Part shown: positions 1 to 62,409 of the stretch, in pieces
How positions within the stretch are numbered: the first letter of the stretch is position 1
Layout of the letters: each line of letters begins with the position of its first letter
From: Leucoraja ocellata
Lineage: Eukaryota
Length of the DNA: 64,000 nucleotides
NCBI GenBank assembly: GCA_036785375.1
Contig: JAWMAR010000007.1
Span: forward strand, 10,974,001-11,038,000
Direction: 5' to 3'
The notes under the pieces: model-generated
Told to the model about the DNA's origin: nothing
Seen by the model: the letters and a program-made list of their open reading frames with translations, nothing else
The model's database searches: none
Made by a program: the position numbers and the translations under genes

Positions 1-3000
1 GTACGCAATACTCCAGGTGTGGTCTCACCAAGACCCTGTACAACTGCAATAGAACCTCCCTGCTCCTATACGTAAATCCTTTTGCAATGAAAGCTAACAT
101 ACCATTTGCTTTCTTTACTGCCTGCTGCACCTGCATGCCTACCTTCAATGACTGGTGTACCATGACACCCAGGTCTCGCTGCATCTCCCCCTTTCCCAAT
201 CGGCCACCATTTAGATAATAGTCTGCTTTCCCGTTTTTGCCACCAAAATGGATAACCTCACATTTATCCACATTATATTGCATCTGCCAAACATTTGCCC
301 ACTCACCCAGCCTATCCAAGTCACCTTGCAGTCTCCTAGCATCCTCCTCACAGCTAACACCGCCCCCCAGCTTAGTGTCATCCGCAAACTTGGAGATATT
401 GCCTTCAATTCCCTCATCCAGATCATTAATATATATTGTAAATAGCTGGGGTCCCAGCACTGAGCCGTGTGGTACCCCACTAGTCACTGCCTTCCATTGT
501 GAAAAGGACCCGTTTACTCCTACTCTTTGCTTCCTGTTTGCCAGCCAGTTCTCTATCCACATCAATACTGAACCCCCAATGCCGTGTACTTTAAGTTTGT
601 ATACTAATCTCTTATGTGGGACCTTGTCGAAAGCCTTCTGGAAGTCCAGATACACCACATCCACTGGTTCTCCCCTATCCGCGCTACTAGTTACATCCTT
701 GAAAAATTCTATGAGATTCGTCAGACACGATTTACCTTTCGTAAATCCATGCTGACTTTGTCCAATGATTTCACCACTTTCCAAATGTGCTGCTATCCCA
801 TCTTTAATAACTGACTCTAGCAGTTTCCCCACTACCGATGTTAGACTAACTGGTCTGTAATTCCCCATTTTCTCTCTCCCTCCCTTCTTAAAAAGTGGGG
901 TTACGTTTGCTACCCGCCAATCTTCAGGAACTACTCCAGAATCTAAAGAGTTTTGAAAGATTATTACTAATGCATCCATTATTTCTGGAGCTACTTCCTT
1001 AAGTACTCTGGGATGCAGCCTATCTGGCCCTGGGGATTTATCGGCCTTTAATCCATTCAATTTACCCAACACCACTTCCCGGCTAACCTGGATTTCACTC
1101 AATTCCTCCAACTCCTTTGACCCGCGGTCCCCTGCTATTTCCGGCAAATTATTTATGTCTTCCTTAGTGAAGACGGAACCAAAGTAGTTATTCAATTGGT
1201 CCACCATATCCTTGTTCACCATGATCAACTCACCTGTTTCTGACTGCAAGGGACCTACATTTGTTTTAACTAATCTCTTTCTTTTCACATATCTATAAAA
1301 ACTTTTGCAGTCAGTTTTTATGTTCCCTGCCAGTTTTCTTTCATAATCTATTTTTCCTTTCCTAATTAAGCCCTTTGTCCTCCTCTGCTGGTCTCTGAAT
1401 TTCTCCCAGTTCTCCGGTATGCTGCTTTTTCTGGCTAATTTGTACGCATCATCCTTCGCTTTGATACTATCCCAGATATTCCTTGTTATCCACAGATGTA
1501 CTACCTTCCCTGATTTATTCATTTGCCAAACTGGGATGAACAATTATTGTAGTTCATCCATGCAGCCTTTAAATGTCTTCCATTGCATATCCACCGTCAA
1601 CCCTTTTAGAATTAATTGCCAGTCAATCTTGGCCAATTCACGTCTCATACCCTCAAAGTTACCTTTCTTTAAGTTCAGAACCATTGTTTCTGAATTAACA
1701 ATGTCACTCTCCATCCTAATGAAGAACTCAACCATATTATGGTCACTCTTGCCCAAGGGGGCACGGACAACAAGATTGCTAACTAACCCTTCCTCATTAC
1801 TCAATACCCAGTCTAAAATAGCCTGCTCTCTCGTTGGTTCCTCTACATGTTGTTTTAGATAACTACCCCGCATACATTCCAAGAAATCCTCTTCCTCAGC
1901 ACCCCTGCCAATTTGATTCACCCAATCTATATGCAGATTGAAGTCACCCATTATAACTGTTTTGCCTTTGTCGCACGCATTTCTAATTTCCTGTTTGATA
2001 CCATCTCCAACTTTACTACTACTGTTAGGTGGCCTGTACACAACACCCACCAGTGTTTTCTGCCCCTTAGTGTTTCGCAGCTCTACCCATACCGATCCAT
2101 CCTCCAAATGTCCTTCCTTTCCATTGCATTAATCCCCTCTCTAATCAGTAACGCTACCCCACCTCCTTTTCCTTTCTGTCTATCCCTCCTGAATATTGAA
2201 TATCCCTGGATGTTCAGCTCCCAGCCTTGGTCACCCTGGAGCCATGTCTCCGTGATCCCAACTATATCATAGTCATTAATAGCTATCTGCACATTCAACT
2301 CATCCACCTTATTACAAATGCTCCTTGCATTGAGACACAAAGCCTTCAGGCTTGTTTTTACAACACTCTTACCCCTTATACAATTATGTTGAAAAGTGGC
2401 CCTTTTTGATTTTTGCCCTGGTTTTGTCTGCCTGCCACTTTTAATTTTCACCTTGCTACCTATTTCTTCTACCCTCATTTTACACCCTTCGGTCTCTACG
2501 CTCACACATTTAAGAAACCCTTTCCCTTTAACTCCATCCTCCACTATCCCGTTCAACACCCCACCCCCCTTATTCAGTTTAAAGCCACCCGTGTAGCAGT
2601 GGCAAACCTGCCTGCCAGAATGCTGGTCCCACACCTGTTAAGATGCAATCCGTCCCTTTTGTACAGTTCCCCCTTACCCCAAAACAGATCCCAGTGATCT
2701 AAGAATCTAAATCCCTGCCCCGTGCACCAGTTCCTCAGCCACATGTTCAGGTCCCGTATCTCCCTGTTCCTGCTCTCGCTAGCATGGGGAACTGGAAGCA
2801 AACCGGAGATAACAACCCTGGAGTACCTGCTTTTCAACATTTTTCCGAGCTCTCTAAAGTCACGCTGCAGAATATTCATCCCCTTTTTTCCGACATCATT
2901 TGTGCCGACATGCACTGCCACTTCCGGATGTTCACCTTCGCCCTTGAGGATTTTCTGCACTCTGTCCGTGACATCCTGGATCCTGGCACCGGGAAGGCAG

Positions 3001-3930
3001 CACACCATCCTCGCATCCCCTCTGTTGCCGCAGAAACCCCTGTTCATACCTCTCACGATGGAGTCTCCCACTACAATGGCCTTGCCTGCCTTAGGCCTTT
3101 TTGGTTTTGGCTCAACAGCCCTATTCGCATCGCAAGCCAGTCCGCCGCTCACGTCTTCTGTCCCAACAGCTTCTAAGCGGATGAACCTGTTTACAAGAGG
3201 TACCCCACCCGGGGATGTTGGCATTCCATGCTTCCTTCCCTTTCTCACTGTCTCCCACCTTCTCTCTTCCAGTACCTTAGGTGTAACAATCGTACTGTAC
3301 GACTTGTTGAGGAACGACTCCATTTCTCGTACGAACTGGAGGTCGTCCACTTGCTTCTCCAGTTCCCCAACACGGTCCTTCAAGAGCTCTACCTGGATGC
3401 ACTTTTCGCATTTGTAGCAGCCAGAGGCACCAGCGGTGTCCTTGACCTCCCACATACTGCAAGCATCGCACTGTATCAGCTTGCCTGACATCTCCTTCTT
3501 TGGTCTCTACCTCTCAAGCGTATTGCGTGGTCTCCTCTCCTCAGCCTCCTCGCCGAAGACTCTTGAGCCAAAGACTCACACTTTACTCGCAAGACCGCTC
3601 ACTCACTGCCGCTCACTAAGAACTGTCCTGCTTAAATTGACTGATAAATTACCTGATTTACCAATTTACAAAGCAAACTCCTCAGTTTTCAACTGTTTTC
3701 ACCCCTCTGACTCACTTCTCTCTTCCCACTTGGGCTAGAGCCAATCAGTCGTATCTCTTGCTAATCTGCTGCTGCTGTTGTTCCTCCCAAATCTACAGCA
3801 GTTCTGAACAAAGACTGTGCGTCCTCGGCCTTTAACTGTTTTCACCCCTCTCCTCCCACTTGGGCTAGAGCCAATCAGTCGTATCTCTTGCTAATCTGTT
3901 GCTGCTGTTGTTCCTCCCAAATCTACAGCA
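1..3930 (-). mobile_element. Young CR1 LINE (5' UTR, ORF1, ORF2 cut by the window edge), copy A
   Basis: Minus-strand ORF1 (2574-3491) and APE-endonuclease ORF2 pieces (CLNARSI, GITETW, YRPP, MGDFN, SDHN); near identical to 34727-38656. Confidence 0.95.
2574..3491 (-). CDS. CR1 ORF1 protein (Cys-rich N-terminus, coiled coil, SGNH/GDSL esterase-like domain)
   Basis: 305 aa open frame with CxxC..CxxC, VGDSIVR, HVGTND and DGLHLN motifs typical of CR1 ORF1 esterase domains. Confidence 0.9.
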   Translation of the reverse strand: MSGKLIQCDACSMWEVKDTAGASGCYKCEKCIQVELLKDRVGELEKQVDDLQFVREMESFLNKSYSTIVTPKVLEERRWETVRKGRKHGMPTSPGGVPLVNRFIRLEAVGTEDVSGGLACDANRAVEPKPKRPKAGKAIVVGDSIVRGMNRGFCGNRGDARMVCCLPGARIQDVTDRVQKILKGEGEHPEVAVHVGTNDVGKKGMNILQRDFRELGKMLKSRYSRVVISGLLPVPHASESRNREIRDLNMWLRNWCTGQGFRFLDHWDLFWGKGELYKRDGLHLNRCGTSILAGRFATATRVALN

Positions 3931-4447: not shown

Positions 4448-4655
4448 TGTGTAGGAAGGTACTGCAGATTCTGATTTATACCGAAGATAGACACAAAATG
4501 CTGGAGTAACACAACGTGCCAGGCAGCATCTATGGAGAAATGGAATAGATTCTACTTCAGGTCTGAAGAAGGCTTCCATTCACAAACATTACCTACTACT
4601 TTTCTCCAGAGATGCCGCATGATCTGCTGAGTTACTCCAGCATTTTGTGTCTATC
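4448..4655. mobile_element. Short palindromic Penelope-like terminal-repeat insertion with 14 bp target-site duplication
   Basis: aacatggtcacaga at both 4434-4447 and 4656-4669. Internal inverted arms agacacaaaatgctggagtaac...gttactccagcattttgtgtct. Related copies near 6100-6460, 9104-9310, 20030-20225, 20495-20755. Confidence 0.65.
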
Positions 4656-4756
4656 AACATGGTCACAGACACAGGTAAAGTATTGATAAAAATAAATGTG
4701 GGTAATGCATCCGACCAATGAATAATGTCCATATTTTAAATCTTTCTCTATCCGAG

Positions 4757-5125
4757 GTGATGTCAGCGCATCTATGGTGATCGGGAAGAGAGGAGGTGGT
4801 GCCACACTGAACTGCAACTTCAAACACTCGAGTGCAAATACCAGGGTGATCACTATCCTCTGGATGAAGGGGACTCCATGGGAAGAGTCCGTTGTCTTTA
4901 AACATACCGGCTCCTACGCCACAAGCGGTCCCGGCACTGACAATGTAAATACAGGAGGTCGATATGAGCTGGTGGGAAACGTAGACAAGGGAGATGCCTC
5001 CATCAGAGTGAGGGGACTCACATTGAATGACACCAACATCTATTTCTGTCATGTTTGGACCTGGAATTCCCCTCTGAAGAAAAATATTCAGGTGACTCAG
5101 GATGAGACGGGACTACAGGTTTTGG
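4757..5125 (+). CDS. Ig V-set exon V1 of Siglec-15-like receptor gene, copy A
   Basis: Acceptor tctttctctatccgAG, donor G|GTAAGG, 369 nt, phase 1-1. Encodes ATLNCNF..ILWMKG..RYELVG..GDASIRV..LNDTNIYFCHV..GLQVL (B-strand Cys, C-strand Trp, DxxxYxC). Confidence 0.92.
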
Positions 5126-5315
5126 GTAAGGAAACAGTCAATGTTGAGGAGTAAATGATAAAATCACATTGAACAACTGTGAGAAGAATGAGCTTTGATC
5201 TGTTTCCTCTCTGAATATTTCACTCCATTCTCCCGCTTGGTCTCTTTCAAATCTTCACCGATTCCTGGTTCTCCCCCTGCACCAATGAATAACAGTGACT
5301 TTTATCCCTCTCTAG

Positions 5316-5463
5316 GCTTCAGCCATCATCTTGGAATGATGGTGATAATGTATCTGGAGATACGTGTGTGTGCAGGAGAGAATGGACAGGTTGATCATTT
5401 CAGCTGCCATTTGTTGAGTCTACTTTCTTGTGATTGGCTTCACTTTCTAGTGATTAAACATAG
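5316..5463 (+). pseudogene. Decayed C2-set/TM exon after V1
   Basis: Colinear similarity to 11650-12200, including the upstream intron and acceptor. Large internal deletions, TTC-TGC-TGG changed to TTC-TAG-TGA, donor GTGAAC changed to ATAAAC. Paralog near 40040-40190. Confidence 0.8.
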
Positions 5464-6848
5464 ATAAACATCATGTCTAATCTCCATTGCTGGTGTTCAT
5501 GGGAGAATCATGGGACCTCCAGTGACATTGTTGTCAGCCTCTGGTTCCGGTAATGGGGGAGGGGAGAAGAGAGAGTAACTCTGGTGTGAGTGATCCTTCA
5601 TTATGTTGGCTGCTTTCCCAAGGAATAAATGCAGTTGATGGGCGGGGGAACGAGGGAAAACCTTTTATTCATTCTACATGGTTAATCCTGAGCTTTCTGG
5701 TGCTTGTAATCCTAATCATCTATGCAATTCCCCCTCTGACTATTTTTTGTGACTTCCTTATAACCTGTCTAATGCAATTTGAAGAACAGGGCTCTCTGCA
5801 TCATTGCAGAATCCATTGAATTCAAGAATTTTGGATGATACTTTTTCTCTCTTTTATCAGAACTAACCAGTTCTACTGAAGATAAGCAAAATGGATTATT
5901 AATCAGTTATTCTCTGAACAATTATTGCAACTTAAAATAAGTTGGCTGAAGTTGCAGAGGTTGTATAGAGGGGTGGATTGGAAATAGGAAATATCTCTGA
6001 AAGGGTGAGTCTAGATTTGCTGTTGATGAAATTATCTGGTTGATAAATTAAGGAAGGAAACTGGAGACAGAGAACACAAACAAAGATAGAAACAGAGCTG
6101 CAAAATGCACGTCAGCTACAAGAAACACGCTGCAGATCAGGCAGCGTCAGTGGAGAGAGGAGAACTGAGTCAGTATTGCAGATGGATAACCTGCTGCAGA
6201 ACTTCTGATACAAACAGTGAGAAAGTTACCAGAAATTGTTGTATTCAATGTTGACTCAATGGTTCAATGGGTCAACCTAGAATAGAGCAATTTCTGGTGA
6301 CTTGCTCGCTGTTTGTATCAGATCTGGCGAGTTCTACAGCATCTGCGATACTGACTCAGTTCTCCTGAAAAAGAGTCACGACCCGAAACGTCACCGATTC
6401 ATTCTATCCAGAGATGCTGCCAGCCCGCTGAATTACTCCAGCATTTTGTGTCTATTTTCGGTTCAATGGTTTCTTTATTATCACATGTAGCAAGTACAGT
6501 GAAATACATTTTTGCATACAGATCAGTAAGAATATCACCGTACATAAATAAGCACAATCCCCCCGGTTAGTACATCATGTACACAAGAACCCACTGAGTC
6601 TGGGCAACAGTTGCCATTTTGCACCATTTTACAGTCCTCGATGCAGTGGCCACAGAGGCCCCATTGCAGCCGCCGCCTCCATTCCAGTTGTCCTGGAATG
6701 TTGACCCTCACCCTGCACAGCCCTATTCAGCCCTTCTTCCCCAGGGGTGGTGTGCGGTGGGGGGGGGCTCCTCCTGCAGATGAGATTAGGGAACGGAAGT
6801 TAAAAACTCCTCCACTCCGCCTGAGTCGGTTAACCAGGCATTTTCTCG

Positions 6849-7760
6849 TTGGCTGCCAGTTACTAGCAGAGTTCCGCAGGGCTCGGTGCTGGGGCCACTG
6901 CTCTTCACGTTGTATATTAATGATTTGGATGAGGGGATTGAAGGCTTTGTGGCCAAGTTTGCAGATTATACAAAAATAGGTGGATGGGCAGGTAGTGCAG
7001 AGAAAGCAGGGTCTCTGTAGAAGAACTTGGATAGGTTGGGAGAGTGGGCAGAGAAGTGGCAGATGGAAAGGTGTGGAAAAGTGTGGAGTCATGTATTTTG
7101 GTAATAGGATTAAAGGCGTTGATTATTTTCTAAATGGGGAGAGAATCCAGAAATCGAAGTTGCAAGGTGATTTGAGAATGCTGGTGCAGGATTCACAAAA
7201 AGTTAATCTGCAAGTTGAAGCAGTTGTAAAGAAAGCAAACGCAATGCTAGCATTTATTTCGAGAGGGTTTATATGCAAAAGTAGGGATGTAATGCTGAGA
7301 ATCTTTCAGGTGCTGGTCAGGCCACATTTGGAATATTGTGAGCAATTTTAGGCACCATATCTGAGGAAGGATGTGCTGGCTCTGGAGAGGGTCCAGAGGA
7401 GGTTCACAAGAATGATCCCAGGAATGAGTAGGATAACATCAGATGAATATTTGACGGCACTGGGCCTATGTTTGCTGCAGTTTAGAAGAATGAGGGAGGA
7501 CCTCATTGAAACAGACAGAATAGTGAAAGGCTTGGATGTGGAGAGGATGCTTCCACTAGTGGGAGAGTCGAAGACGAGAGGTTTAAGCCTCAGAATTAAA
7601 GGACGTTCTTTTAGAAAGGAGATGAGGCTGAATTTCTTTGGTAGGAGGGTGGTGAATCTATGGAATTCATTGCCACAGATGGCTGTGGAGGCAATCAGTG
7701 GATATATTTAAGCAAGAGATAAGTAGATTCCTGATTAGTGCAGATGTCAGAGGTAATGAA
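6849..7760 (+). mobile_element. CR1 LINE 3' RT fragment (paralog about 41575-42490)
   Basis: Degenerate VPQGSVLGP/YINDLD, KKANAMLAFI..LVRPHLEYC, LERVQRRFTRMIPG. Confidence 0.9.
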
Positions 7761-8097
7761 AAGTGCTTCGGGTGCAGAACCTAAGACCCGCCACCCCCCC
7801 TCCCCCTCCCCCCCCCCCCACCTAATTCAGTTAACCGCGCCTTTAGTCACCCTCCATCCTCCTCTCCGGTTCCTGGTCTTCAAGGTCAAGGCTCCATCCT
7901 GGCCAGACTGAAACTGAGATGTCTTTACTTGAGATTGGCCCTTATTAGAATAGTGCAGGTCAGGAACAGGTGGATCAGAGTGGAATGGGATGGAGAATCC
8001 AAGTCACAAGTATGGATGAACTATTGATGAAGACTGTGTGGTTATTGTATTCAATTACTAAATCATATTCACACTTTAAAACTCTTCTCTCTGCAAG

Positions 8098-8460
8098 GTG
8101 ATAATGACAGAGCATCCATGGTGATTGGGAAGAAGGGTGCGACTGCCACACTGCCCTGCTCCTTCAGTCCCTCGAACAGGAATCCCAGCTCCATCACCAT
8201 CAGCTGGATGAAGGGGAATCCACCAAAATGGTCTGTTGTCTTTCGTGACACTTCTCCCCGCCCAGCAGCAAATCGCATTCCTGAAAATGTGAATATAGAA
8301 AATCGATATGAGCTGGTGGGAAATGTGGAGCAGGGAGACGCCTCCATCAGAGTAAAGGGACTCAAACTGGATGACGCCAGTGATTACTCCTGTCACCTTT
8401 ATGTCAGGAATTCAACGTTGACGACTGTGACTCAGGATGAGATGAAACTGCAGGTTGTGC
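8098..8460 (+). CDS. Ig V-set exon V2, copy A
   Basis: Acceptor ctcttctctctgcaAG, donor C|GTAAGG, 363 nt, phase 1-1. Encodes ATLPCSF..ISWMKG..RYELVG..GDASIRV..LDDASDYSCHL..KLQVV. Confidence 0.92.
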
Positions 8461-8534
8461 GTAAGGAAACATATGTTATGCTGTAAACGATAACATCATA
8501 TTGCACAACCTTAAGAGGAATGAGCTCCCACTGA

Positions 8535-9560
8535 CAGTGTAGACCAGCACAGGAACAGGCCCTTTGACCCGCAATGTCTGTACAGAACATGATGCTACGT
8601 TAATCTCGTCTACCTGCAGGTGATACATTTCTTCCATTACCTGCATTTCAAAAAGTCTCTAAAACTCCACTATCGTAGCTGCCTCCACCTCCACCCCTAG
8701 CAGTATTTTCCTGGCACCCACCACCCTCTGTGTAAACAATAACTTTCCCCACATATCTCCTTTCATCTTTTCCCATCTGTCCTTGTCACAATACCGTCTA
8801 TTCGTTGACATTTCCGCCGTAGGCAAAAGGTTCTGACTCTCTCTCCTATCCATGTCTTTCATATTTTTATAAACTTTCAACAGTCCAGAGAAACAGTTCA
8901 AGTATGTCCGACCTTTTCTTATAACTATTACCCTCTAATCCAGGCAGCATTCTGCTAAACCTCTTCTGAACCCTTTCCAAAGTCTCCTCATCCTTCCTGT
9001 AATGGGTGAAAACTGCACATAAAACTGAATGCAATAATCCCAGTGTCGTAACTAAAGTTGTATAGAGCTACAACATGACTTCCTGACTCTTGTATTCAGT
9101 AGATAGACACTAAAAGCTGGAGTAACTCACCGGGACAGACAGCGTCTCTGGAGAGAAGGAATGGATGATGTTTCGGGTCAAGTATCTTCTTCTTGACCTG
9201 AAACGTGACCCATCCTTTCTCTCCAGAGATGCTGCCTGTCCCGCTGAGTTACTCCAGCTTTTTGTGTCCATCTTCGGTTTTAACCAGCATCTGCAGTTCC
9301 TTCCTACACATCTTGTATTCAGTACCTTGACCAATGAAAGCAAGAAAACTGTACACGTTTTTAACGTGTTGCCATTTTCAGGGAGTAATGGAATTGGATC
9401 CCAATATTTTTCTGTACACCAGTGGTATTAAGGGTCTTGCCCTTGTATATTTTCCACTTGCATTCAACATCCCAAAGACAACACTTCACATATGTTCGGA
9501 TCAAACTCCATCTGCCATTTCTCTGCCTATATCTGTATTAGATTAAAATTTGTAGTATCT
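8535..9560 (-). mobile_element. Old CR1 3' fragment with nested palindromic repeat (9104-9310)
   Basis: Minus ORF 8659-8901 resembles the CR1 ORF2 C-terminus (FTQRVVGA); CR1-type 3' end near 8535. Confidence 0.75.
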
Positions 9561-9629
9561 TTCGACAGTTCTACGTTCATCTGTCTTCCTCATGATGCTC
9601 TTGCATTGTCAATGAGCAACACTACAGCC

Positions 9630-9710
9630 CATGTGTGGGTTTGATATTTGAGCTGCCACATGTGGACTGCACTCTTACGATTGGCTTCACTTTCTCATGT
9701 TTGAACAGAG
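9630..9710 (+). pseudogene. Decayed TM exon remnant after V2
   Basis: gctgcc..cttacgattggcttcactttctcatgtttgaacagaG|GTGAAC aligns to the functional gctgcc..cttataattggcctcacattctgctggttgaagagaG|GTGAAC, and the downstream intron is also homologous. The Arg codon position reads TGA. Paralog near 44055-44135. Confidence 0.8.
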
Positions 9711-9862
9711 GTGAACGCCACTGTCTCATCTCCAATGTTAGTGTTGACGGGAGACTTGTGGCATCTCCAATGATATTGTCATCAGCCTCTAGCTATGGTG
9801 GTTTGGGTCAGGTAATATTGACTTTTGAGGCAGTTCTGGCCAGTTCTTATACTTAACAGTAA

Positions 9863-10528
9863 AGGGCTTGTCCCACTTAGGTGATTTTTTAGGCGACTGC
9901 CGGTGACTGTCATGGTCGTAGCAGGTTGCCGAAAAACCGGTGACTGGACCCCCCCCCCACGACAATGTCTACAACAACCAACCACCTAGTCGACGTTAAG
10001 CCATGACATCCGGCGACTCAATCGTCACGACTTAGGACGTCCACCTACGACCACACCTAGACAACCCTACGACCACACAGGTGACAACCTACGATAACTC
10101 GTCAACCGACCTCCACCCGCGACAAGCTACGACAAGCTACCACCCTGTCGGTGACAATTGAAGACTTCTCTTGACGCCGGTAGCTGTTGCCGGTTGACGC
10201 AGGTTGACGTAGGTAGTCCCCAAATGAATTCATCGAAGTCAGCAGCAGCGACAACATACATCATCCTGGCAACAACCTATGTTATCCTGGCGACAACTTA
10301 CGACAGCACCTACGTCAGGAGAAGACAAGCTACGACAAGCCCAAGATCGCTGAGTGTCGCCAAAAAGATTTGAACATTTCAAAATCCTGCGGCGACCAGA
10401 AAAACGCTACGGATCTTTGGGCGACTTGAGGAGACGACTCACGACCCTACATGTGACACCCGGCAACCGTGTGGTGACCGCCTAGTTGCCCGTTGTCGCC
10501 TAATAATCGCGTACGTTGGACAGGCCCT
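9863..10528. mobile_element. Non-autonomous PIF/Harbinger-type DNA transposon (MITE)
   Basis: Imperfect TIRs agggcttgtccca..ttaggcgac / gtcgcctaa..ttggacaggccct, TAA target duplication (9860-9862, 10529-10531), internal ctacgac repeats. Confidence 0.85.
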
Positions 10529-10757
10529 TAAGCAAGTTATTGAAATTGTTGTATTAAATGTTAACACAAAAGCTTCATGCTGCCCAGACAGAAGATGAGG
10601 TTGCTTGAGATTGGGCCTCGTTAGAACAGTGCAGGAGGTCTGAGACAGACAGATCAGAGCGGGAGTGGGATGGGGAATCAATGTCACAGGCATGGTTGAT
10701 GTATTTTTATAAACCATGTGGAATAGATTGTTTAAATACAACTTTTCTCTATACAAG

Positions 10758-11120
10758 ATGGAAAGAAGAAGACATCCATGGTGATTGGGAAGAGAAGAGA
10801 TTCAGCCACACTGCCCTGCTCCTTCAGCCCCTTGAACAAGAATCCCAGCCCCATCACTGTCCGCTGGATGAAGGGGAATCCACGGGAAGAGTCCACAGTC
10901 TTTAATCACACCCACCCCCACTCTGTGAACCCTCCCTCCACTGTCACTGTAAAGGGAGGAGGTCGATATAAGCTGGTGGGAAAACTAGACCGGGGAGACG
11001 CCTCTATCAGCGTGAAGGAACTCAGACTGGACGACAGCAGTGACTATTTCTGTTACGTTTGGGTCAGGAATTCCACACAGGAGACGGTGACTCAGGATGA
11101 GACTAAACTGGAGGTTGTGG
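10758..11120 (+). CDS. Ig V-set exon V3, copy A
   Basis: Acceptor cttttctctatacaAG, donor G|GTAAGG, 363 nt, phase 1-1. Encodes ATLPCSF..VRWMKG..RYKLVG..GDASISV..LDDSSDYFCYV..KLEVV. Confidence 0.92.
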
Positions 11121-11769
11121 GTAAGGAAATATCTGTCTGTGTTGTGCTGTGAGCGATAAAATCACATTAACAACTGTAAGAGGACATGAGATCCACTGAC
11201 AGCTGGAGCCAAGATCGGCCCAATCCATTGTAGGTTCCATTCCTTGCACCGGGCTTCCCTTGCTCAGCACTGCCCCTAGTGGTTGGAAAACAGTGCTGAT
11301 TCCAGCCAGGTTGCACGGAGCTCCCTGCAGCAGGATCAGAGATTCAGAACCATATTCACCTGCTGAACCTCCAGTCCCTGTGTCTGTGACATGGTCTGTG
11401 TTACAAAGATCCACAGACGGCTCTGGGGTATCATCCGTCTCTTTCATTCACATCGACTCCGGGATCCTGTATGTTCTCTCACTGAATATTACATAGAACA
11501 GTACAGCACAGGACCAGGCCCTTTGGCCCGCAATATCTGTGCAGAATATAATGGTTCTTTAAGTTAAACTAATATCATCTGCTGACACATGATCCATATC
11601 CCTCCATTCCCTGTAGATCCATGTGCTTCTCAAAGACACCGTCATATCTGCAAATATTTCACTGCAGTCTCCTAGATGTGTCCTTCCAATCCCCATTCAG
11701 ATGGACTCTATCTGCACACACCAACAGTGATTAATTCAATGAATTTAATACATTTTTTCCTTCTCCAAG

Positions 11770-12135
11770 TCCCAGCCACCATCCTGGAGCTGTTCGTTGT
11801 GAGTGACAATGTAACTGGAGAGCCCACCCTCATGTGCAGGGCTGAAGGGAAGCCCCCTGCAAACATCGTGTGGATCGGCCCAGGGAACGGTGCACTGCCC
11901 GTGACCAGTAATGAGATGACAGTCACACATGATCCAGAGAAACTACTGACTGTGGGAGAGCTGCTTCACCTCAGGCTGCCAGGGAAATACATGTGTGTGG
12001 CTGTGAATGAACACCAGATGGACACGCGTGAGATTCGCCTTTTCGAGGATGGACTAAGAGCGTTGGCCATTCGGGCTGCCATTTATGCCGTCTATTTTCT
12101 TATAATTGGCCTCACATTCTGCTGGTTGAAGAGAG
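11770..12135 (+). CDS. Ig C2-set + transmembrane exon, copy A (may read through to stop at 12234-12236)
   Basis: Acceptor ttttttccttctccaAG, phase 1. Encodes LMCRAEGKPPANIVWIGP..GKYMCVAVNEH (compare Siglec-15 LCTAEGEPPPALAWSGP..GRYTCTAANSLG, from memory), then TM ALAIRAAIYAVYFLIIGLTFCWL and KR. Weak donor G|GTGAAC. Confidence 0.88.
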
Positions 12136-12348
12136 GTGAACGTCTTCATCTCAGTTCCATTGCCGGTGTCAACAGGAGGGATGCTGCACCTCCAGTGACA
12201 GTGTCAGGTTCTTTTGTTGTAGATCAGGCAGTGTAACTTCGGAGATAAACAATGCTACATTCCCGCAGCTATGACCGTGTGTCTGTGGAGTACATGCAGC
12301 TGTCCTCACGTCAGTCTGAATCAGTGGCCCCTCCTTTGTTTCTTGTGC

Positions 12349-12354
12349 AATAAA
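12349..12354 (+). terminator. Candidate polyadenylation signal, copy A
   Basis: AATAAA 113 nt after the read-through stop; homologous to AATAAA at 48108 in copy B. Confidence 0.45.
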
Positions 12355-12769
12355 AACCAGCATTCCATTTGTCTTAACAACTGTTTACAATACCTGCACG
12401 CAAGTCTCGTGTTTCACGTGTACGTACCCAATGTTAGGGGAAAATGAAACGGCAAGTTATTATTTGATTGGTATGTGACTGCAATCCTTTTCTTAACTGT
12501 CTTCCACGTATCTTAACACCATCACCCTCATTCTACGGCCCACTGGTTCCTATTAGATTTCATTCCCCCAATATAAGTGCTATTTTGCATACCTACCTAA
12601 TTTTTGCAAACCTACCTGTGGTATTTGATTAAAGATCTTCTGAACATGCAGATACACTGCACCCACTCACATTTTCCTACCAATTACATTCTTGGAAACA
12701 AACTCCCAGCACAGCTGTCAACCATTGAATAAATAAAAATGCTTGCAGTTCTGATTTCCCCAGTACAGG

Positions 12770-18400: not shown

Positions 18401-19218
18401 ATCTGCACACCCAGCAACCCAGGAAATTTGTTGGATTTTTTTGAAGAAGATGGGTTTATGGATCCACGGATTTCCCAGGGTCCACACACAAACTCACCCA
18501 ACAACCTGTGTATCTTTGGGTGCAGTTTGACCTGGTTTCTTCCCATATCCCAGGGTATCACAGATTAGGATTGGACTCTGGTCTCTGGAGCTGTTCAGAG
18601 TTTGTTCTACTCATGCAACATTAATTTGTCCCTCTAATAGGTGAGTGGTAAAATCGTAGATGTGGAGGTGAGGTGTTGGAGTTGATGCAGATGTGGGCAG
18701 ATTAAAATGAGTCCCACAGTTTTTTGTCTCCATTTTACTGATCCACTGTGAAATCTATTCAAAATTTCCCTCTGGGAGTTCTGTGAATTCTTGCACCTTT
18801 TAGCTCAGGGACTCCAGTCACCCACAGACAGGAGACAACTGGAAGACAGTTGACTGGACCTTGATGCTGTTATGTGAGCAGCTACACCTTCTGTGGGACT
18901 TCTGGGACCTGGTTCCAATCTACAGTTTGTTTGTTGGGTGTAAATTTTGCAGCATAGGTTGGAGATCTGAACCAGAGGGTGACACCCTCATTGCATCTGC
19001 CAGTTCCACTCAGATTCAGCAAGGATGGAGACTGGATGACTGAAATGCAGTGTGTCAAAATGGACTTTGCCATTTGATGCTGGCTGACAATTCTTGCAAA
19101 GTCTCTGGAGCCCTTTTACACTCTGTGTTAACTGCACAACTCAGAAAACGGCAGGAAGCAGCAAGGAGTCTTGGTCCCACCGAACCTAAAGGATTCGAAG
19201 GCTCAATAAGAGAAGTGA

Positions 19219-19259
19219 ATGTTTTTGATTTGCCTTTGCACTGCCTGTCTCCACTGATC
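19219..19259 (+). pseudogene. Inactivated paralog of the signal-peptide exon
   Basis: Homologous to 30327-30375 with flanks (about 18975-19389). 8 nt shorter, frameshifted to TGA, donor GTAAGT changed to GTACAA. Confidence 0.8.
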
Positions 19260-19389
19260 GTACAAATATTTTAATACAGAGCAGCAGTTGGTTTTCTGGC
19301 TGCTTCACTGTGAGTGAAACATATATCTATGAGATAGACTGGGCTGTCCACGGCAATGGAGCAAAATCAGTCTTTTGATGCTATACTTA

Positions 19390-30326: not shown

Positions 30327-30375
30327 ATGCTGTTCATTTTGCTTTGTGCCTTTGCACTGCCTGTCACCGCTAATC
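30327..30375 (+). CDS. Signal-peptide (leader) exon of receptor gene copy B
   Basis: ATG in agaATG context, MLFILLCAFALPVTAN + C, perfect donor GTAAGT. Phase 1 matches all V acceptors. Identical copy at 62177-62225. The link to the V exons is inferred. Confidence 0.78.
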
Positions 30376-39483: not shown

Positions 39484-39850
39484 GTGATGTCAGCGCATCT
39501 ATGGTGATCGGGAAGAGAGGAGGTGGTGCCACACTGAACTGCAACTTCAAACACTCGAGTGCAAATAGCAGGGTGATCACTATCCTCTGGATGAAGGGGA
39601 CTCCATGGGAAGAGTCCGTTGTCTTTAAACATACCCGCTCCTACGCCACGTGGTCCCGGCACTGACAATGTAAATAGAGGAGGTCGCTATGAGCTGGTGG
39701 GAAACGTAGACAATGGAGATGCCTCCATCAGAGTGAGGGGACTCATGTTGAATGACACCAACAACTATTTCTGTCATGTTTGGACCTGGAATTCCCCTCT
39801 GAAGAAAAATTATCAGGTGACTCAGGATGAGATGGGACTACAGGTTTTGG
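39484..39850 (+). pseudogene. V1 exon, copy B, frameshifted
   Basis: Splice sites intact but 367 nt. A 2 nt loss near 39650 (gccacaagcggt vs gccacgtggt) gives TGA at 39663-39665. Confidence 0.88.
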
Positions 39851-42807: not shown

Positions 42808-43170
42808 GTGATAATGACAGAGCATCCATGGTGATTGGGAGGAAGGGTGCGACTGCCACACTGCCCTGCTCCTTCAGTCCCTCGAACAGGAATCCCAGCT
42901 CTATCATCATCAGCTGGATGAAGGGGAATCCACCAAAATGGTCTGTTGTCTTTCGCGACACTTCTCCCCGCCCAGCAGCAAATCACATTCCTGAAAATGT
43001 GAATATAGAAAATCGATATGAGCTGGTGGGAAATCTGGAGCAGGGAGACGCCTCCATCAGAGTGAAGGGACTCAAACTGGATGACGCCAGTGATTACTCC
43101 TGTCACGTTTATGTCAGGAATTCAGGGTTGACGACTGTGACTCCGGATGAGATGAAACTGCAGGTTGTGG
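42808..43170 (+). CDS. Ig V-set exon V2, copy B (intact)
   Basis: AG/GTAAG intact, 363 nt, open frame. Confidence 0.88.
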
Positions 43171-44950: not shown

Positions 44951-45179
44951 TAAGCAAGTTATTGAAATTGTTGTATTAAATGTTAACACAAAAGCTTCAT
45001 GCTGCCCAGACAGAAGATGAGGTTGCTTGAGATTGGGCCTCGTTAGAACAGTGCAGGAGGTCTGAGACAGACAGATCAGAGCGGGAGTGGGATGGGGAAT
45101 CAATGTCACAGGCATGGATGATGTATTTTTATAAACCATGTGGAATAGATTGTTTAAATACAACTTTTCTCTATACAAG

Positions 45180-45542
45180 ATGGAAAGAAGAACACATCGA
45201 TGGTGATTGGGAAGAGAAAAGATTCAGCCACACTGCCCTGCTCCTTCAGCCCCTTGAACAAGAATCCCAGCCCCATCACTGTCCGCTGGATGAAGGGGAA
45301 TCCACGGGAAGAGTCCACAGTCTTTAATCACACCCACCCCCACTCTGTGAACCCTCCCTCCACTGTCACTGTAAAGGGAGGAGGTCGATATGAGCTGGTG
45401 GGAAAACTAGACCAGGGAGACGCCTCTATCAGAGTGAAGGAACTCAGACTGGACGACAGCAGTGACTATTTCTGTTACGTTTGGGTCAGGAATTACACAC
45501 AGGAGACGGTGACTCAGGATGAGACTAAACTGGAGGTTGTGG
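45180..45542 (+). CDS. Ig V-set exon V3, copy B (intact)
   Basis: AG/GTAAGC intact, 363 nt, open frame. Confidence 0.88.
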
Positions 45543-46125: not shown

Positions 46126-46336
46126 GATCCAGAGAAACTACTGACTGTGGGAAAGCTGCTTCACCTCACGCTGCCAGGGAAATACACGTGTGTGGCTGAG
46201 AATGAACACCAGATGGACACGCGTGAGATTCGCGTAATCGAGGATGGACGAAGTGATGAAGTGTTGGCCATTCGGGCTGCCATTTATGCCGTCTATTTTC
46301 TTATAATTGGCCTCACATTCTGCTGGTTGAAGAGAG
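46126..46336 (+). pseudogene. C2/TM exon, copy B, 5' half and acceptor deleted
   Basis: cagatgGAtccagag joins copy A positions 11705 and 11933 (227 bp lost). The remainder encodes DPEKLL..KYTCVAENEH..TM. Confidence 0.88.
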
Positions 46337-47386
46337 GTGAACGTCTCCATCTCAGTTCCATTGCCGGTGTCAACAGGAGGGATGCTGCACCTCCAGTGAC
46401 AGTGTCAGGTTCTTTTGTTGTGGATCAGGCAGTGTAACTTCGGAGATAAACCATGCTACATTCCCGCAGCTATGACCGTGTGTCTGTGGGGTACATGCAG
46501 CTGTCCTCACGTCAGTCTGACTCAGCGGCCCCTCCCTCAGTAGTGTATCTGATACTTTTGCTACTGCATTGCTGCTGATTCCTGCATCCACATAGAACTC
46601 AAATTTCACATGGCTCTTAGCTGTCTTCCTGCATCCTAATCCATGGCTTAATCTCTACATTAGCTGACAGTGGCCTTAGCAGCTTTGAATCATTTCATCA
46701 ACTTCTTTGCTAATTCTTTCCCCAAGGCAGAGCAAGAATAGCTTTTCCCTGATCCTCATTTCCCACCCACTAGTCTCTGCATTCAGTGGATCAACCTTTA
46801 TAGCTTCTGTTACCATCAGTGCTGGTACACCAACAGACACATCTTCCACCTGCCTACACTTTCAGCATCCTGAGGGGTCCTTTCCCTTTGCGACTCCATC
46901 ATCTGCTCTTCCATTCCATTCAACCATTTACTCGGAACAGTGCATGGTGTAGCTTTCCAGGCTAGACTGTGCAATCAACAATATCGGTGAGCTCACTTTC
47001 TCTGTCTGTGTCAAAGCTGGTCAGCTGTGTTGTAGATAATCCATCTGCATTATGAACTTGTTTTCCTCTCTCTACGGGCACGGCCTGATCTGTGGCCATC
47101 TCCTGTAGCTCTGGCTTGCTTTTGCAGTTTCTACATGCTGTCTTTCTAAATGCCCAGATAGCTTTGTCAATCATTTATTACTATGGACACCAGGCCTTTC
47201 CCCTATGTCATTCCTTTTTCGCTGTCCCTCTCTCATTATCTCACTCTTTCTGTGCCAACAATCTTTTTTATTGTCTCAGCTATTCAATCAGAAGCATGAA
47301 CTCTTTCTCTCTGCACAGATGCCGCCTGACCTGTTGAGTATCCTTTGCACTCTGGAGAAACATTCCCTTTTCCTTGCGGATCACAG

Positions 47387-57618: not shown

Positions 57619-57780
57619 NNNNNNNNNNNNNNNNNNNNNNNNNNNNNNNNNNNNNNNNNNNNNNNNNNNNNNNNNNNNNNNNNNNNNNNNNNNNNNNNNN
57701 NNNNNNNNNNNNNNNNNNNNNNNNNNNNNNNNNNNNNNNNNNNNNNNNNNNNNNNNNNNNNNNNNNNNNNNNNNNNNNNN
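57619..57780. other. Assembly gap (N run)
   Basis: 162 Ns inside the second C/T-rich unit. Confidence 0.99.
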
Positions 57781-59220: not shown

Positions 59221-62200
59221 GAATGTGCAGAATCCTGTCCCACCGTCGGTGTATTCCAAGGCGCTTTGCAAACAATGAAGCTCGGTGAAGCACTGTGATT
59301 GTGATGTTGGGGAAAGCAGAAACTAGTGCACAAATAACTTTCCACAAACAGCAATGACCAGGCTAGGAAGAACTGTACCATCCAATCAGTGTTCTTGGTA
59401 AGCAGCAACCTGGCACATGTCACCAGAGGATTTATCCCTGACCTCAGTAAAATTCACTGGACAAACTAATCCCACCTAGACACCAGAATCATGGATTTGT
59501 TTTTGGTTCTAGTTGTGTTTTGCTCTAATGTATCGATTTTGCTTTATAATATTTTGATTGTCTTGCAGAATTTATGTGATTAATGTATCATTTGTTTATG
59601 TGTCTGAGTCTATGTACTTCTCATGCTGCTGCAAGCAAGATTTTCATTGTACCCGTACCTCACTATACCGACGCATATGTGACAATAAACCGCGAGAATA
59701 AAATGTGAAATTCAGACATTTCTAGTGGTGGGGTGACTGTGAAAATCCCTGCAAAGGGAATATTGATCTGATGTGAATGTGTCCTTTAGGACCGGACAAT
59801 GTTTCCCCCTCTACTCTCAAGCTCTGTGCCGAACAACTGGCACAGACATTTTTAACCAGTCCCTGCAAACCTGTATTGACCCTGCCTGTTTCAAAGTCTC
59901 CGCTATTGTCCCTGTACCCAAAAAGGCAAGGATTACTGGTCTTGACTACAGGCTTGTCGCACTGACCTCTGTAGTCATGAAGACCCTTGAAAGGGTTGGG
60001 CTGGCCAAGCTGAAAAATATCACAAACCCCCTGCTGGACCCTCTGCAGTTTGTATATCGGGCCAATAGAACAGTGGGTAACACAGTCAGCCTAGGCCTGC
60101 ACTTTATCCTCCAGCACCTAGACAGCCTAGATTAATTGTGCCAGAGCTACTACACTCCAAACTTTCCGAGTTGTCTGTGACCTGAACCCCTCTGTTGGTG
60201 GATCACCAGCTTTCTAACAGACAGGAAGCAGCATGTGAGTCTGGGAAAGCACATCTCGGACCCTCAGCAGAGGAGCACGGCAAGGCTGCACACTCTCCCC
60301 TCTCCTCTACTCTCTCTACACCAATAACTGCACTCCACAGACACCTCTGTCAAGCTTCTCAAGTTTGCGGACAATGCAACCCTAATAGGACTGATCCAGG
60401 ATGGGGAGGAATCTGCCTACAGACAGGAAGTGTCACAGCTGGCGTGCAGGAGCCAACGCAACAACCTGGAGCTCAATGCTCTTAAGGCAGTGGAATTGAT
60501 TGTAGACTTTAGGAGAGTTTCTCCCTCCCCTCACCCCACTCACCATCAACAATACCACAGTCACATCTGTGGAGTCTTTTAAGTTCCTGGGAACCATCAT
60601 CTCCAAGGACCTTCTACCCCCGGGTCCCCACTGCAGACGCCGCGCCAGCTGGAACTCTGCAGACCGGGGCTTCAGGCTGCCGGCTGCCGTGGACCAGCGA
60701 AACGGAGCGCTCCCCCTCAGGCGAGCCCCTGCTCCACTCCCAGAGCCCACGCTGCACCCACCGCTGAGCCCCGGGCGCGTCTCTGGGAAAAGCCGCCCGA
60801 CCTTCGCTGTTTGACCACGGGGGAGGTGACCTGGAAAAATTCACCTCTCTGTGGAGGAGGTGACCGAAGCGGTTTCCCCCTTACCCCCCCCCCCCACACA
60901 AAACGCAGAGAGGAACATTAAAAACATACATTAAAAGATACTAAAAAAACAAAAGAAGTTGAAAAAAATCCGGAGGTTGCAGAGAATCATCCGATCAGTT
61001 AAGAAGGTTATTGGCTGCAACCTTCCCTCCATTGACAAACTGTACACTGCAGAGGCTAAGAAGCGAGTGGATAAGATCATCTCTGACAACTCTCACCCTG
61101 GCCACAAACTCTTTGAATCATGTCCCTCTGGAAGGCGACTCCGGACTGACAAAGCTGCCACAGCCAGACATAAAAACAGCTTTTTTTCCATGACTATTAG
61201 CTCTACTCAACAGCCAACAATCTGTAGCCTCCTTCTGCTCTGGTATTTTATTTAATTCACATGTTTGATCAATGTGTTTTATTATTAATGTTTAGTGTTT
61301 TATGTATCATTTATAACTGTCACTGTATGTCATGTTGTCACATGTGGGCGGATCACAAATTCCTTGTTTGTGAATACATAGCCAATAAACTTATTCATGC
61401 ATGCATCCATTCATTCATGCATACATTCATTCATTCATCCATTCGTTAAGAATTATGCACGGTATCACATATCAAATATTTGGTGATGCATTGAGGGATG
61501 ATGCAGGGTCTTGACCTGAAACGTCAACCATTACTCTGCCTCCACAGATGCAACCTAACGCATTGAGGACCTCCTGCAATATGTTTTTCTGCATGTCAAA
61601 TATTTGGTTAAATGAGGTACAACTGTAATTAACAAGAACCTGATTAATATTAGGTATGGTTTCTTACATTTGTGACAAATTTATCCATGTCATAATCAAA
61701 ACTATAAAATTATTATAAAACTTGATAACATATAATTTCATCATCACCCAGCACAAATGCATTTTGCAATCCTTTTCATATTTTGCTTCAGGTTATAAAC
61801 AAGGAACAATCTTGCTTCTTACTTCCTGGTCAACTTTCTGAGAATTCTGCAAGCTCTTTCTAATCAAGATAAAAGTGTGGTGTGGACTTGAAATATTGCT
61901 GGCGTACCACCGACAGCAGCCAGAGGGTGAAGCCCTTGTTGCTGCTGTCAGTTCCACTCAGATTCTGCTGGACAAGGACTGGTTGATTGAAATGCAAAGT
62001 GTCAAAATTGACTTCTCCATTTGAAGCTGTATGACAATTCTTGCAAAGTCTCTTGCGCCCGTTTACACTCTATGATAAATGTACAATTCAGAAAACTACA
62101 GAAAACTGCTGGAGTCTCGGTTCTACTCGTCCAGTGGATAGACTTACGGCATTTGAAAGCTCAACGAGAGAAGAGAATGCTGTTCATTTTGCTTTGTGCC

Positions 62201-62409
62201 TTTGCACTGCCTGTCACCGCTAATCGTAAGTATCCTTTAATAAGGAACAGAAGTTGCTTTTCTGGCTGTTTCACTGTGAGTGAAATGATTAACTGTATGA
62301 GATAGACATGTGTGTCCGTGGAAACAGAGCAGGATCAGTCTTTTGATGCTGTACTTAAGGTGACAGGCAGTCTTCCAGAAAGGGAATATGTATGTGTGTG
62401 AAGACCTTT
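59221..62409 (+). repeat. Segmental duplication block, start of third unit (copy C)
   Basis: Paralog of 26988-30559. Confidence 0.95.
62177..62225 (+). CDS. Signal-peptide exon of receptor gene copy C
   Basis: Identical to 30327-30375: MLFILLCAFALPVTAN, donor GTAAGT. Confidence 0.75.

What the first reader, a model, noticed from the sequence alone, without database searches (positions are those of the whole stretch)
4757..12354. Siglec-15-like receptor with three interchangeable V exons feeding one constant C2-TM exon
Seen: three paralogous V-set exons, all phase 1-1 with good splice sites, lie upstream of a single C2+TM exon. In copy B a single intact leader (30327) precedes the set. Any subset of V exons splices in frame without a junction stop. 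Known: Siglec-15 is V+C2+TM, and the C2 and V motifs here resemble it (recalled alignment). Inference: the locus makes either a novel 3V-C2 receptor or alternative V-C2 isoforms by cassette splicing. The latter would be a splice-based variable/constant immune receptor in a cartilaginous fish, with no V(D)J recombination.
Basis: partly seen in the sequence, partly recalled or inferred. Interest (0 to 1): 0.88.

Follow-up and report, generated by a model that had tools for sequence, protein, structure and literature searches.

The report
Skate Siglec-15-like receptor, three V exons
This is part of a skate-specific cluster of Siglec-15-related immune receptor genes in which one antibody-like (V) exon was triplicated, and the evidence favours all three copies being strung together in one protein rather than chosen one at a time by splicing.

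Summary
Three paralogous V-set exons (4757-5125, 8098-8460, 10758-11120), all phase 1-1, precede one exon coding a C2 domain, a transmembrane helix with Arg and a short tail (11770-12236). Decayed C2-TM relics follow V1 and V2.

The family call is right. Human Siglec-15 is the best solved match, and NCBI names the shark, ray and chimaera homologues Siglec-15.

The cassette-splicing reading is not supported:
- RefSeq models in two other skates string V1-V2-V3 in series, behind an extra N-terminal V0 domain that the window lacks.
- V1, V2 and V3 each form a well-supported clade across four skates.
- One RNA-like run has a contig joining V2 to V3 exactly at the predicted splice sites, and probably another joining V3 to C2.
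- In-frame compatibility is generic for Ig-domain exons.

V1 inclusion was not seen, and minor isoforms cannot be excluded.

The window holds a 34.7-kb duplication at about 98% identity. Copy B is broken. All three V domains lack the Siglec arginine.

Best reading: an activating-type, multi-V member of a birth-and-death paired-receptor cluster. It is a new member of a known kind, of modest interest. The scan noted the same architecture on neighbouring DNA (s1-885277, s1-884619, s1-900013).

The parts
4757..5125 (+). V1 exon (V-set domain, phase 1-1), copy A
   Evidence: Open frame, AG acceptor and GTAAGG donor. Pfam V-set E 2.3e-15. 96% identical to V1 of A. radiata XP model P0152.
5378..5542 (+). 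Fossil of a C2-TM exon after V1 (TM and tail part; weaker C2-start remnants lie just upstream)
   Evidence: blastn to the intact exon gives 71.5% over 144 nt, E 1.6e-12. Local alignment. The TM Arg codon is replaced and the frame is broken.
8098..8460 (+). V2 exon (V-set domain, phase 1-1), copy A
   Evidence: Pfam V-set E 3.2e-14. An RNA-like contig covers 8100-8459 and continues directly into V3 (record 26).
9639..9829 (+). Second fossil of the C2-TM exon after V2
   Evidence: blastn gives 71.6% over 109 nt, E 2.3e-10. In the alignment the Arg codon CGG of the intact exon faces TGA.
10758..11120 (+). V3 exon (V-set domain, phase 1-1), copy A
   Evidence: Pfam V-set E 3.1e-14. Best solved match is Siglec-15 7ZOZ at E 1.4e-7. 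97% identical over 120 columns to V3 of L. erinacea P0151.
11770..12236 (+). Terminal coding exon: C2-type Ig domain, TM helix with Arg (codon 12072-12074), short tail, stop
   Evidence: 84% identical to the TM-Arg type models of Rhinoraja longicauda (P0154, P0005). RNA-like contigs lie on 11769-11957 and 12067-12334.
12237..12354 (+). 3' untranslated stretch up to the AATAAA at 12349
2..3506 (-). LINE remnant (esterase-like ORF1, endonuclease, reverse transcriptase) in the intron upstream of V1
   Evidence: Pfam RVT_1 E 1.8e-31, Exo_endo_phos_2 E 2.8e-11, Lipase_GDSL_2 E 2.9e-11.
19140..19310 (+). Fossil leader exon (frame-breaking deletions, donor destroyed)
   Evidence: 75% identical to the leader region. 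Alignment.
30327..30375 (+). Leader (signal peptide) exon upstream of copy B, phase 1
39484..39850 (+). V1' of copy B, with a 2-bp deletion (frameshift near 39650)
   Evidence: tblastn splits into two frames. Base-by-base comparison.
42808..43170 (+). V2' of copy B (open frame)
45180..45542 (+). V3' of copy B (open frame)
46126..46437 (+). Truncated C2-TM exon of copy B. The stretch matching 11706-11930 of copy A (acceptor and first Cys half of C2) is missing.
62177..62225 (+). Leader exon of the next gene copy, whose body lies beyond the window
   Evidence: Unchecked scan note s1-884619.

Best explanation
The stretch holds the last four coding exons of an activating-type member of a skate-specific, tandemly duplicated cluster of Siglec-15-related immunoglobulin-superfamily receptor genes.

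How it arose (inferred from the relics): a block [V exon + C2-TM exon] was triplicated inside the gene. The C2-TM exons of the first two blocks decayed. That left three V exons in a row before the one surviving C2-TM exon.

How it most likely works:
- Transcripts most likely include V1, V2 and V3 in series.
- The product is a type I membrane protein with three V-set domains and one C2 domain.
- The V frameworks are conserved and the loops have diverged.
- None of the three V domains has the arginine that Siglecs need to bind sialic acid.
- The transmembrane Arg and short tail suggest signalling through an ITAM adaptor (inferred).
- A paralogue with nearly the same V domains and a tyrosine-motif tail would be the inhibitory partner.

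Shown here: the exons, the relics, the family relationship, orthology of each V across skates, and a V2-V3 splice in RNA-like data. Inferred: V1 inclusion, adaptor pairing, ligand.
For: Exons and domains.

Relics of the C2-TM exon lie after V1 and V2. No leader-like sequence lies between the V exons, so V2 and V3 have no signal peptide of their own.

Family:
- Siglec-15 is the best solved match.
- NCBI names the homologues Siglec-15.
- The canonical skate orthologue P0158 aligns with human Siglec-15 from V through C2 to the TM lysine.

Serial architecture in relatives:
- P0001 (A. radiata) and P0151/P0172 (L. erinacea) read V0-V1-V2-V3-C2. X1 and X3 differ only in the tail.
- More than one strong V per gene model occurs in 7 of 12 skate-cluster models. 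It occurs in 0 of 12 non-skate models per gene unit and in 0 of 2 canonical skate Siglec-15 models.

Long-term retention. The V1, V2 and V3 clades each hold all four skates:
- V1: 5 rows, support 100/100.
- V2: 7 rows, support 100/99.
- V3: 11 rows, support 100/98.
- All frames are open.

RNA-like evidence:
- In run X4 exon bins are many times deeper than intron bins.
- Record 26 lies on 8100-8459 and then 10757-10969 in one contig. That is the predicted V2-V3 junction.
- Record 30 lies on 11769-11957 with 131 further letters. Its depth (67.6) and end distance match the contig over 11011, so it is probably V3-C2.
- Record 31 covers the TM-Arg part.
Against: - V1 lay outside the 6,000 letters that could be laid, so its inclusion is unseen.
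- The X4 contigs differ from copy A by about 0.5-2% in V2/V3 and about 7% in the first half of C2. They may come from a paralogue or a close relative (coded organism), not from this very gene.
- Contigs show presence, not absence, so minor skipped isoforms are not excluded. Only 15 of 1,103 joints were printed.
- R. longicauda has models with V1 followed directly by V3 (P0154). It also has models with a single V3-like domain plus TM-Arg (P0004, P0005, P0163, P0175 by sequence; P0176 only by its 93% identity and length in the listing).
- No V0 exon is in the window.
- No protein encoded by the window was listed in two searches covering 195-1043 aa.
- dN/dS between copies A and B is about 1 on few changes.
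Confidence: 0.6

Rival explanations
1. Cassette model: the three V exons are alternative cassettes, and transcripts join the leader to one V, or to varying subsets, and then to C2-TM. This would give a splice-based choice of binding domain.
For: All junctions are in frame without stops. The loops of V1-V3 are strongly diverged with dN/dS 0.6-1.1 between them. One R. longicauda model goes from V1 straight to V3 (P0154). The V2 contig of X4 stops at the exon's start, which means a branch there.
Against: Phase 1-1 is generic for Ig-domain exons. An RNA-like contig joins V2 to V3. The RefSeq four-V models include all V exons, and the two isoforms seen differ only in the tail. The branch at the V2 acceptor is explained by the unspliced intron contig that ends at 8097 (record 25).
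Confidence: 0.1
2. Copy A is a decaying or silent member of a birth-and-death cluster. It lost V0 and is no longer a working gene, and the expressed sequences seen belong to paralogues.
For: V0 is absent between the leader and V1 in the homologous copy B. Copy B is plainly broken. dN/dS between A and B is about 0.8-1.8 on 7-11 changes per exon. No window-encoded protein appeared. The X4 contig over the start of C2 has 14 other letters in 189.
Against: All four exons of copy A are open, with intact splice sites and a polyadenylation signal. A contig 97% like the TM-Arg part is present at exon-like depth in X4 (record 31).
Confidence: 0.15
3. V1 and V2 are dead leftovers that are always skipped. 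The working gene would then be leader-V3-C2-TM, a two-domain receptor like mammalian Siglec-15.
For: R. longicauda models with only a V3-like domain plus TM-Arg: P0004, P0005, P0163 and P0175 by sequence, and P0176 by listing only. V3 is the sister of the V of the canonical skate Siglec-15 (98/87). The AU test rejects V1+V2+V3 as one clade (p 0.006; the group was named after seeing the tree).
Against: V1 and V2 keep open frames, framework residues and splice sites in four skates. V2 is spliced to V3 in X4.
Confidence: 0.1

Closest known systems
Human Siglec-15 (PDB 7ZOZ)
   Same: Best solved sequence match of V3 (E 1.4e-7). The C2 part also matches (E 1.6e-3). Both are type I receptors with a basic residue in the membrane helix and a short tail. 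The B- and F-strand cysteines line up.
   Different: The window gene has three V domains instead of one. The arginine after the F-strand Cys (CRV in Siglec-15; the number R143 is recalled) is His, His and Tyr in V1-V3. The membrane residue is Arg near the outer end of the helix. It is not the Lys that the canonical skate orthologue P0158 shares with Siglec-15.
Chondrichthyan 'sialic acid-binding Ig-like lectin 15' RefSeq models (e.g. L. erinacea XP_055488168, Pristis pectinata, Heterodontus francisci)
   Same: Same family. The window V exons are homologous to their second V (strong matches), and the C2 is homologous as well.
   Different: Those models are leader-V0-V-C2-TM(Lys), about 400 aa, with one V of this type. 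The window has three and shows no V0.
Four-V skate models: A. radiata LOC116971578 (XP_032874704) and L. erinacea LOC129695366 (XP_055488227, XP_055488229), named 'uncharacterized protein'
   Same: They carry V1, V2 and V3 in the same order, each orthologous to the window's exon. Protein identity to the window is 84-95%.
   Different: They begin with V0. The L. erinacea protein has a different TM without Arg, and a long tail with tyrosine motifs such as PIYSVV, LIYSIV and TLYSNL. It is the inhibitory type, whereas the window's copy A is the TM-Arg type.
Paired activating/inhibitory Ig receptors (Siglec-5/14, KIR, LILR, SIRP; recalled)
   Same: Near-identical ectodomains are coupled either to a charged TM with a short tail or to a tyrosine-motif tail. 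The genes lie in a tandem cluster with broken copies.
   Different: No adaptor or ligand is known here. The domain gain came from an internal block triplication that left fossil terminal exons.
Dscam1-type mutually exclusive Ig-exon splicing (arthropods; recalled)
   Same: Tandem paralogous Ig-domain exons, all frame-compatible. This is what the cassette model would resemble.
   Different: Here two neighbouring V exons are found joined in one RNA-like contig, which mutual exclusion forbids. There are only three exons. No selector or docking structure was looked for.
Modular domain immune-type receptors of the clearnose skate (recalled; one library paper mentions the term, listing only)
   Same: Skate multigene family of Ig receptors with a variable domain number and with activating and inhibitory forms.
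   Different: By my recollection those domains resemble CD300, pIgR and TREM. None of these is among the 60 best solved matches of V3. No sequence comparison was possible.

Membership tests
Immunoglobulin V-set domain (Pfam PF07686) | Profile match above the curated threshold | tested here: met
   V1 57.1 bits, V2 53.5 bits and V3 53.5 bits against a cut-off of 26.
Siglec-15 family | Closest sequence relatives are Siglec-15 proteins | tested here: met
   7ZOZ is the top solved match of V3. Homologues are named Siglec-15 by NCBI in several chondrichthyans, among them L. erinacea, P. pectinata, H. sabinus, M. hypostoma, H. francisci, M. asterias and R. longicauda. These names are automatic.
Siglec-15 family | Arginine on the F strand needed for sialic acid binding (CRV; R143 recalled) | tested here: not met
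   The column holds His (V1), His (V2) and Tyr (V3). The V0 domain of relatives keeps Arg (P0151, P0001), but V0 is not in the window.
Siglec-15 family | Architecture of one V-set plus one C2-set domain | tested here: not met
   Three V exons precede the C2 exon. Chondrichthyan relatives already have two V domains.
Siglec-15 family | Lysine in the membrane helix for DAP12 (K274 recalled) | tested here: not met
   The window has Arg in LAIRAAIYAVYFL. The canonical skate orthologue P0158 has a Lys aligned with the Lys of Siglec-15. A basic residue may still serve an adaptor.
Siglec-15 family | Binding of sialylated glycans | not testable with these tools
   Needs a binding assay.
Paired activating/inhibitory receptor cluster | Charged TM with short tail in one member, and a tyrosine-motif tail in a paralogue with a similar ectodomain | tested here: met
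   Copy A has a TM Arg and a tail of about 35 residues without tyrosine. P0172 has 85-95% identical V domains and a tail with IYSVV, IYSIV and LYSNL. That this paralogue lies next to the window rests on an unchecked note.
Mutually exclusive cassette splicing of V exons | Transcripts never carry two of the alternative exons together | tested here: not met
   Record 26 of run X4 carries V2 and V3 joined. It comes from a 98-99.5% identical sequence, perhaps a paralogue.
Rearranging antigen receptor V segment | Recombination signal heptamer after the V exon | tested here: not met
   0 of 3 V exons have CACAGTG or CACTGTG within 80 nt of their 3' end. Each ends in a splice donor and includes its own G strand.

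The most novel reading that the evidence does not exclude
Besides the serial V1-V2-V3 form, the gene makes regulated minor isoforms that skip one or two V exons, or that end in the fossil exon after V1. One locus would then give receptors with different V make-up, a modest splice-based diversification of an innate receptor in a cartilaginous fish.
Probability: 0.12. Interest if true: 0.7.

Novelty: new member of a known kind. Interest (0 to 1): 0.3.

Why it matters
If the serial reading is right, skates turned a two-V Siglec-15-type receptor into four-V or three-V paired receptors. They did so by duplicating a [V + terminal exon] block and then losing the inner terminal exons. The fossil exons document this domain accretion cleanly.

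The added V domains lack the sialic-acid arginine, and this copy lacks the arginine-bearing V0. The cluster may therefore have moved to ligands other than sialic acid.

It does not offer a new route to receptor diversity, which was the reason for the high first score. No paper in the searched library treats Siglec-15 relatives of cartilaginous fishes. The proteins exist only as automatic RefSeq models.

Tried and rejected
- V0 exon and tyrosine-motif tail exons: a tblastn search with word size 2 and E up to 50 gave only weak hits to V1-V3 themselves and the two leaders. No V0 or tail exon was found.
- Leader copies between the V exons: none. Only 19.0-19.4 kb (a fossil), 30.1-30.6 kb, 61.9-62.4 kb and a 37-nt chance-level hit at 22142.
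- RNA runs: no listed holder is on record as RNA. Of the four runs laid, three behave as DNA and one as RNA. The printed joint and loose-end tables were filled by repeats (SINE-like elements at about 6355-6460 and 9155-9310), so rarer V junctions could not be read.
- dN/dS between copies A and B: too few changes to decide.
- Literature: one search was too loose. None of the 15 papers holding 'Siglec-15' and 'shark' is about fish Siglecs by title or abstract. One paper holds the term 'modular domain immune-type receptor'. In one search none of the 15 listed papers holds 'Siglec' together with Leucoraja, Amblyraja, Callorhinchus or chondrichthyan. I saw search listings only and read no paper. 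Supplements were not consulted.
- Rejected: a rearranging V segment, because no heptamers are present and each V is a complete domain.
- Rejected: MDIR membership, because there are no CD300, pIgR or TREM matches among the best 60. That is a weak test.
- No structure was predicted, because the V-set fold is not in doubt.
- The species was not settled. The window is closest to L. erinacea in V3 and to A. radiata in V1 and the leader.
- L. erinacea isoform X2 was not found in any search.

Full report
**What is there**

Reading and translating 4500-12600 shows three open V-type exons and one longer last exon. After correcting the donor positions, the coordinates are:
- V1: 4757-5125
- V2: 8098-8460
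- V3: 10758-11120
- last exon: 11770 to the stop at 12234-12236, with AATAAA at 12349

Each V exon is 363-369 nt long and is entered and left in phase 1. Each has a pyrimidine-rich AG acceptor and a GTAAGG donor.

Pfam calls all three V-set (E 2e-15 to 3e-14). It calls the last exon a C2/I-type Ig domain near threshold. The last exon continues into a hydrophobic helix with an Arg (LAIRAAIYAVYFLIIGLTFCWL) and a short tail. The V exons are 52-58% identical as protein.

All possible junctions among leader, V exons and C2-TM are stop-free. This follows from the phase 1-1 rule of Ig-domain exons (established knowledge). It is not evidence for interchangeability.

**Surroundings**

The window contains a segmental duplication:
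- 1-8889 matches 34727-43596 at 97.8%.
- 9181-11705 matches 43605-46127 at 98.0%.
- Further blocks follow up to 30559 against 62409.

Copy B repeats the V1-V2-V3-C2TM array but is damaged:
- V1' has a 2-bp deletion.
- The stretch equal to 11706-11930 is missing. It holds the acceptor and the first half of the C2 domain.

Leader exons lie at 30327-30375 and 62177-62225 (MLFILLCAFALPVTAN, phase 1). A decayed leader lies near 19.2 kb. A LINE sits in the intron before V1.

Behind V1 and V2 lie relics of the C2-TM exon (71.5% and 71.6% identity, E 1.6e-12 and 2.3e-10). In the second relic the Arg codon faces TGA. No leader relic lies between the V exons.

The array therefore arose by triplication of a [V + C2-TM] block inside one gene, followed by decay of the two inner terminal exons. 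This is inference from the relics.

**Family**

- V3's best solved match is human Siglec-15 (7ZOZ, E 1.4e-7). TIM-3, VSIG4 and other Siglecs follow.
- The C2 part matches Siglec-15 at E 1.6e-3, rank 11.
- A search of 1.84 billion representatives with V3 gave 223 proteins at E up to 0.001.
- The best hits are chondrichthyan proteins that NCBI names 'sialic acid-binding Ig-like lectin 15' or 'uncharacterized'.

Their common plan is leader, V0, V, C2, TM and tail. The window's V exons match the second V strongly and V0 only weakly.

The canonical little-skate protein P0158 aligns with human Siglec-15 through V0. It aligns again from the second V through C2 to the membrane Lys.

The arginine after the F-strand Cys of Siglec-15 is His, His and Tyr in V1-V3. 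V0 of the close relatives keeps it. No V0 exon exists anywhere in the window, including the 9 kb between the leader at 30327 and V1'.

**Serial or alternative?**

Four lines favour serial use.

1. RefSeq models of two other skates read V0-V1-V2-V3-C2: A. radiata XP_032874704 and L. erinacea XP_055488227/XP_055488229. The two L. erinacea isoforms differ only in the tail.
2. In a tree of 41 V domains, V1, V2 and V3 each form a well-supported clade (100/100, 100/99, 100/98). Each clade holds the window, A. radiata, L. erinacea and R. longicauda, and all frames are open. So all three have been kept since before these genera split. More than one strong V occurs in 7 of 12 skate-cluster models and in none of 12 non-skate models per gene unit.
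3. V2 and V3 have no leader of their own.
4. Reads. Of four runs of one study, three give even depth over introns and exons, so they are DNA. X4 gives exon bins many times deeper than intron bins, so it is RNA-like.
   - X4 record 26 lies on 8100-8459 and continues at 10757-10969. That is the predicted V2-V3 junction, shifted by one base because the contig has the copy-B-like G at 8460.
   - X4 record 30 lies on 11769-11957 and has 131 further letters. A contig of the same depth (67.6) covers 11011, 23 letters from its end, which fits V3 10989-11120 joined to C2. This second junction is inferred, not printed.
   - X4 record 31 covers the TM-Arg part.

**Limits**

- V1 was outside the 6,000 letters laid.
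- The contigs differ from copy A by 0.5-7% and may come from a paralogue or a close relative.
- Contigs cannot show absence.
- Only 15 of 1,103 joints were printed, all in repeats.
- R. longicauda has a model going from V1 to V3 (P0154). It also has single-V TM-Arg models: P0004, P0005, P0163 and P0175 by sequence, and P0176 by listing only.
- No protein encoded by the window appeared in two searches.
- dN/dS between copies A and B is near 1 on 7-11 changes per exon.
- Between V1, V2 and V3 dN/dS is 0.6-1.1, with changes concentrated in the BC, C'-D and FG loops and frameworks kept.
- The AU test rejects V1+V2+V3 as a clade apart from the V of canonical skate Siglec-15 (p 0.006; the group was named after the tree). 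V3 is that V's sister, so the order of duplications is open.

**Mechanism proposed**

The product is a type I receptor with three V-set domains and one C2 domain. This copy apparently lacks the arginine-bearing V0. The membrane Arg and the tyrosine-free short tail point to an ITAM adaptor (inferred).

L. erinacea P0172 has 85-95% identical V domains and a tail with tyrosine motifs, so it is the inhibitory counterpart. Scan notes place such a gene right after the window (unchecked).

Copy B shows birth-and-death turnover.

**Comparison and novelty**

The gene works like a paired activating receptor and belongs by descent to the Siglec-15 family. It fails three defining features of Siglec-15 proper: the arginine, the one-V architecture and the membrane Lys.

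The multi-V plan is already present in automatic RefSeq models. No paper in the library treats it (listings only).

The joined leader-V1-V2-V3-C2TM model was deliberately not built or searched.

**Verdict**

The cassette model is not supported but is not excluded as a minor phenomenon. Interest is modest.

Noticed in passing
window 1-30559 versus 34727-62409: A segmental duplication of about 34.7 kb at about 98% identity carries the whole receptor unit. Copy B has an extra 1.5 kb or so after 46535. Whether both copies are real, or partly a haplotype artefact, was not settled. DNA runs show one or two contig paths depending on the place.
   Followed up: partly
window 39650 and 46126: Copy B is pseudogene-like. 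V1' has a 2-bp deletion, and 225 bp covering the acceptor and first half of its C2 exon are lost. V2' and V3' stay open.
   Followed up: yes
window 19140-19310: Fossil leader exon, 75% like the live leaders, with 8 nt of deletions in the coding part and a destroyed donor. It is the trace of an older, otherwise vanished gene copy inside the repeat unit.
   Followed up: yes
window about 5300-5330: The first relic keeps an AG acceptor-like site. If V1 were spliced to it, the C2 frame would read five codons and stop. This could in principle give a secreted single-V product. I read this by eye and have no evidence of use.
   Followed up: no
proteins P0158, P0159, P0165, P0007: In the canonical chondrichthyan Siglec-15 orthologues (membrane Lys kept), the V0 position of the essential arginine is Leu (CLVDL or CLVEL). 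The expanded paralogues (P0151, P0001, P0009, P0017) keep Arg (CRVEL, CRVVL or CRVDF).
   Followed up: partly
protein P0003 (A. radiata LOC116971575): This RefSeq model looks like a fusion of two neighbouring genes: V2-V2-C2 followed by the untranslated leader region, signal peptide and V0 of the next gene. P0002 (Mobula birostris) likewise holds two complete receptor units.
   Followed up: partly
window 12190-12236 versus P0005/P0154: The cytoplasmic end differs by frame between this gene (…PPVTVSGSFVVDQAV) and R. longicauda (…PPSGSVRFR), so the extreme tail is not conserved.
   Followed up: no
window 6355-6460, 9155-9310, 11355-11554: SINE-like elements with enormous depth in all four runs. 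They swamp the joint and loose-end tables.
   Followed up: no
window 55900-57000 and 57619-57780: A long proline/serine/leucine-rich low-complexity tract with internal repeats (ORFs) lies next to the only N run of the window. I left it untouched.
   Followed up: no
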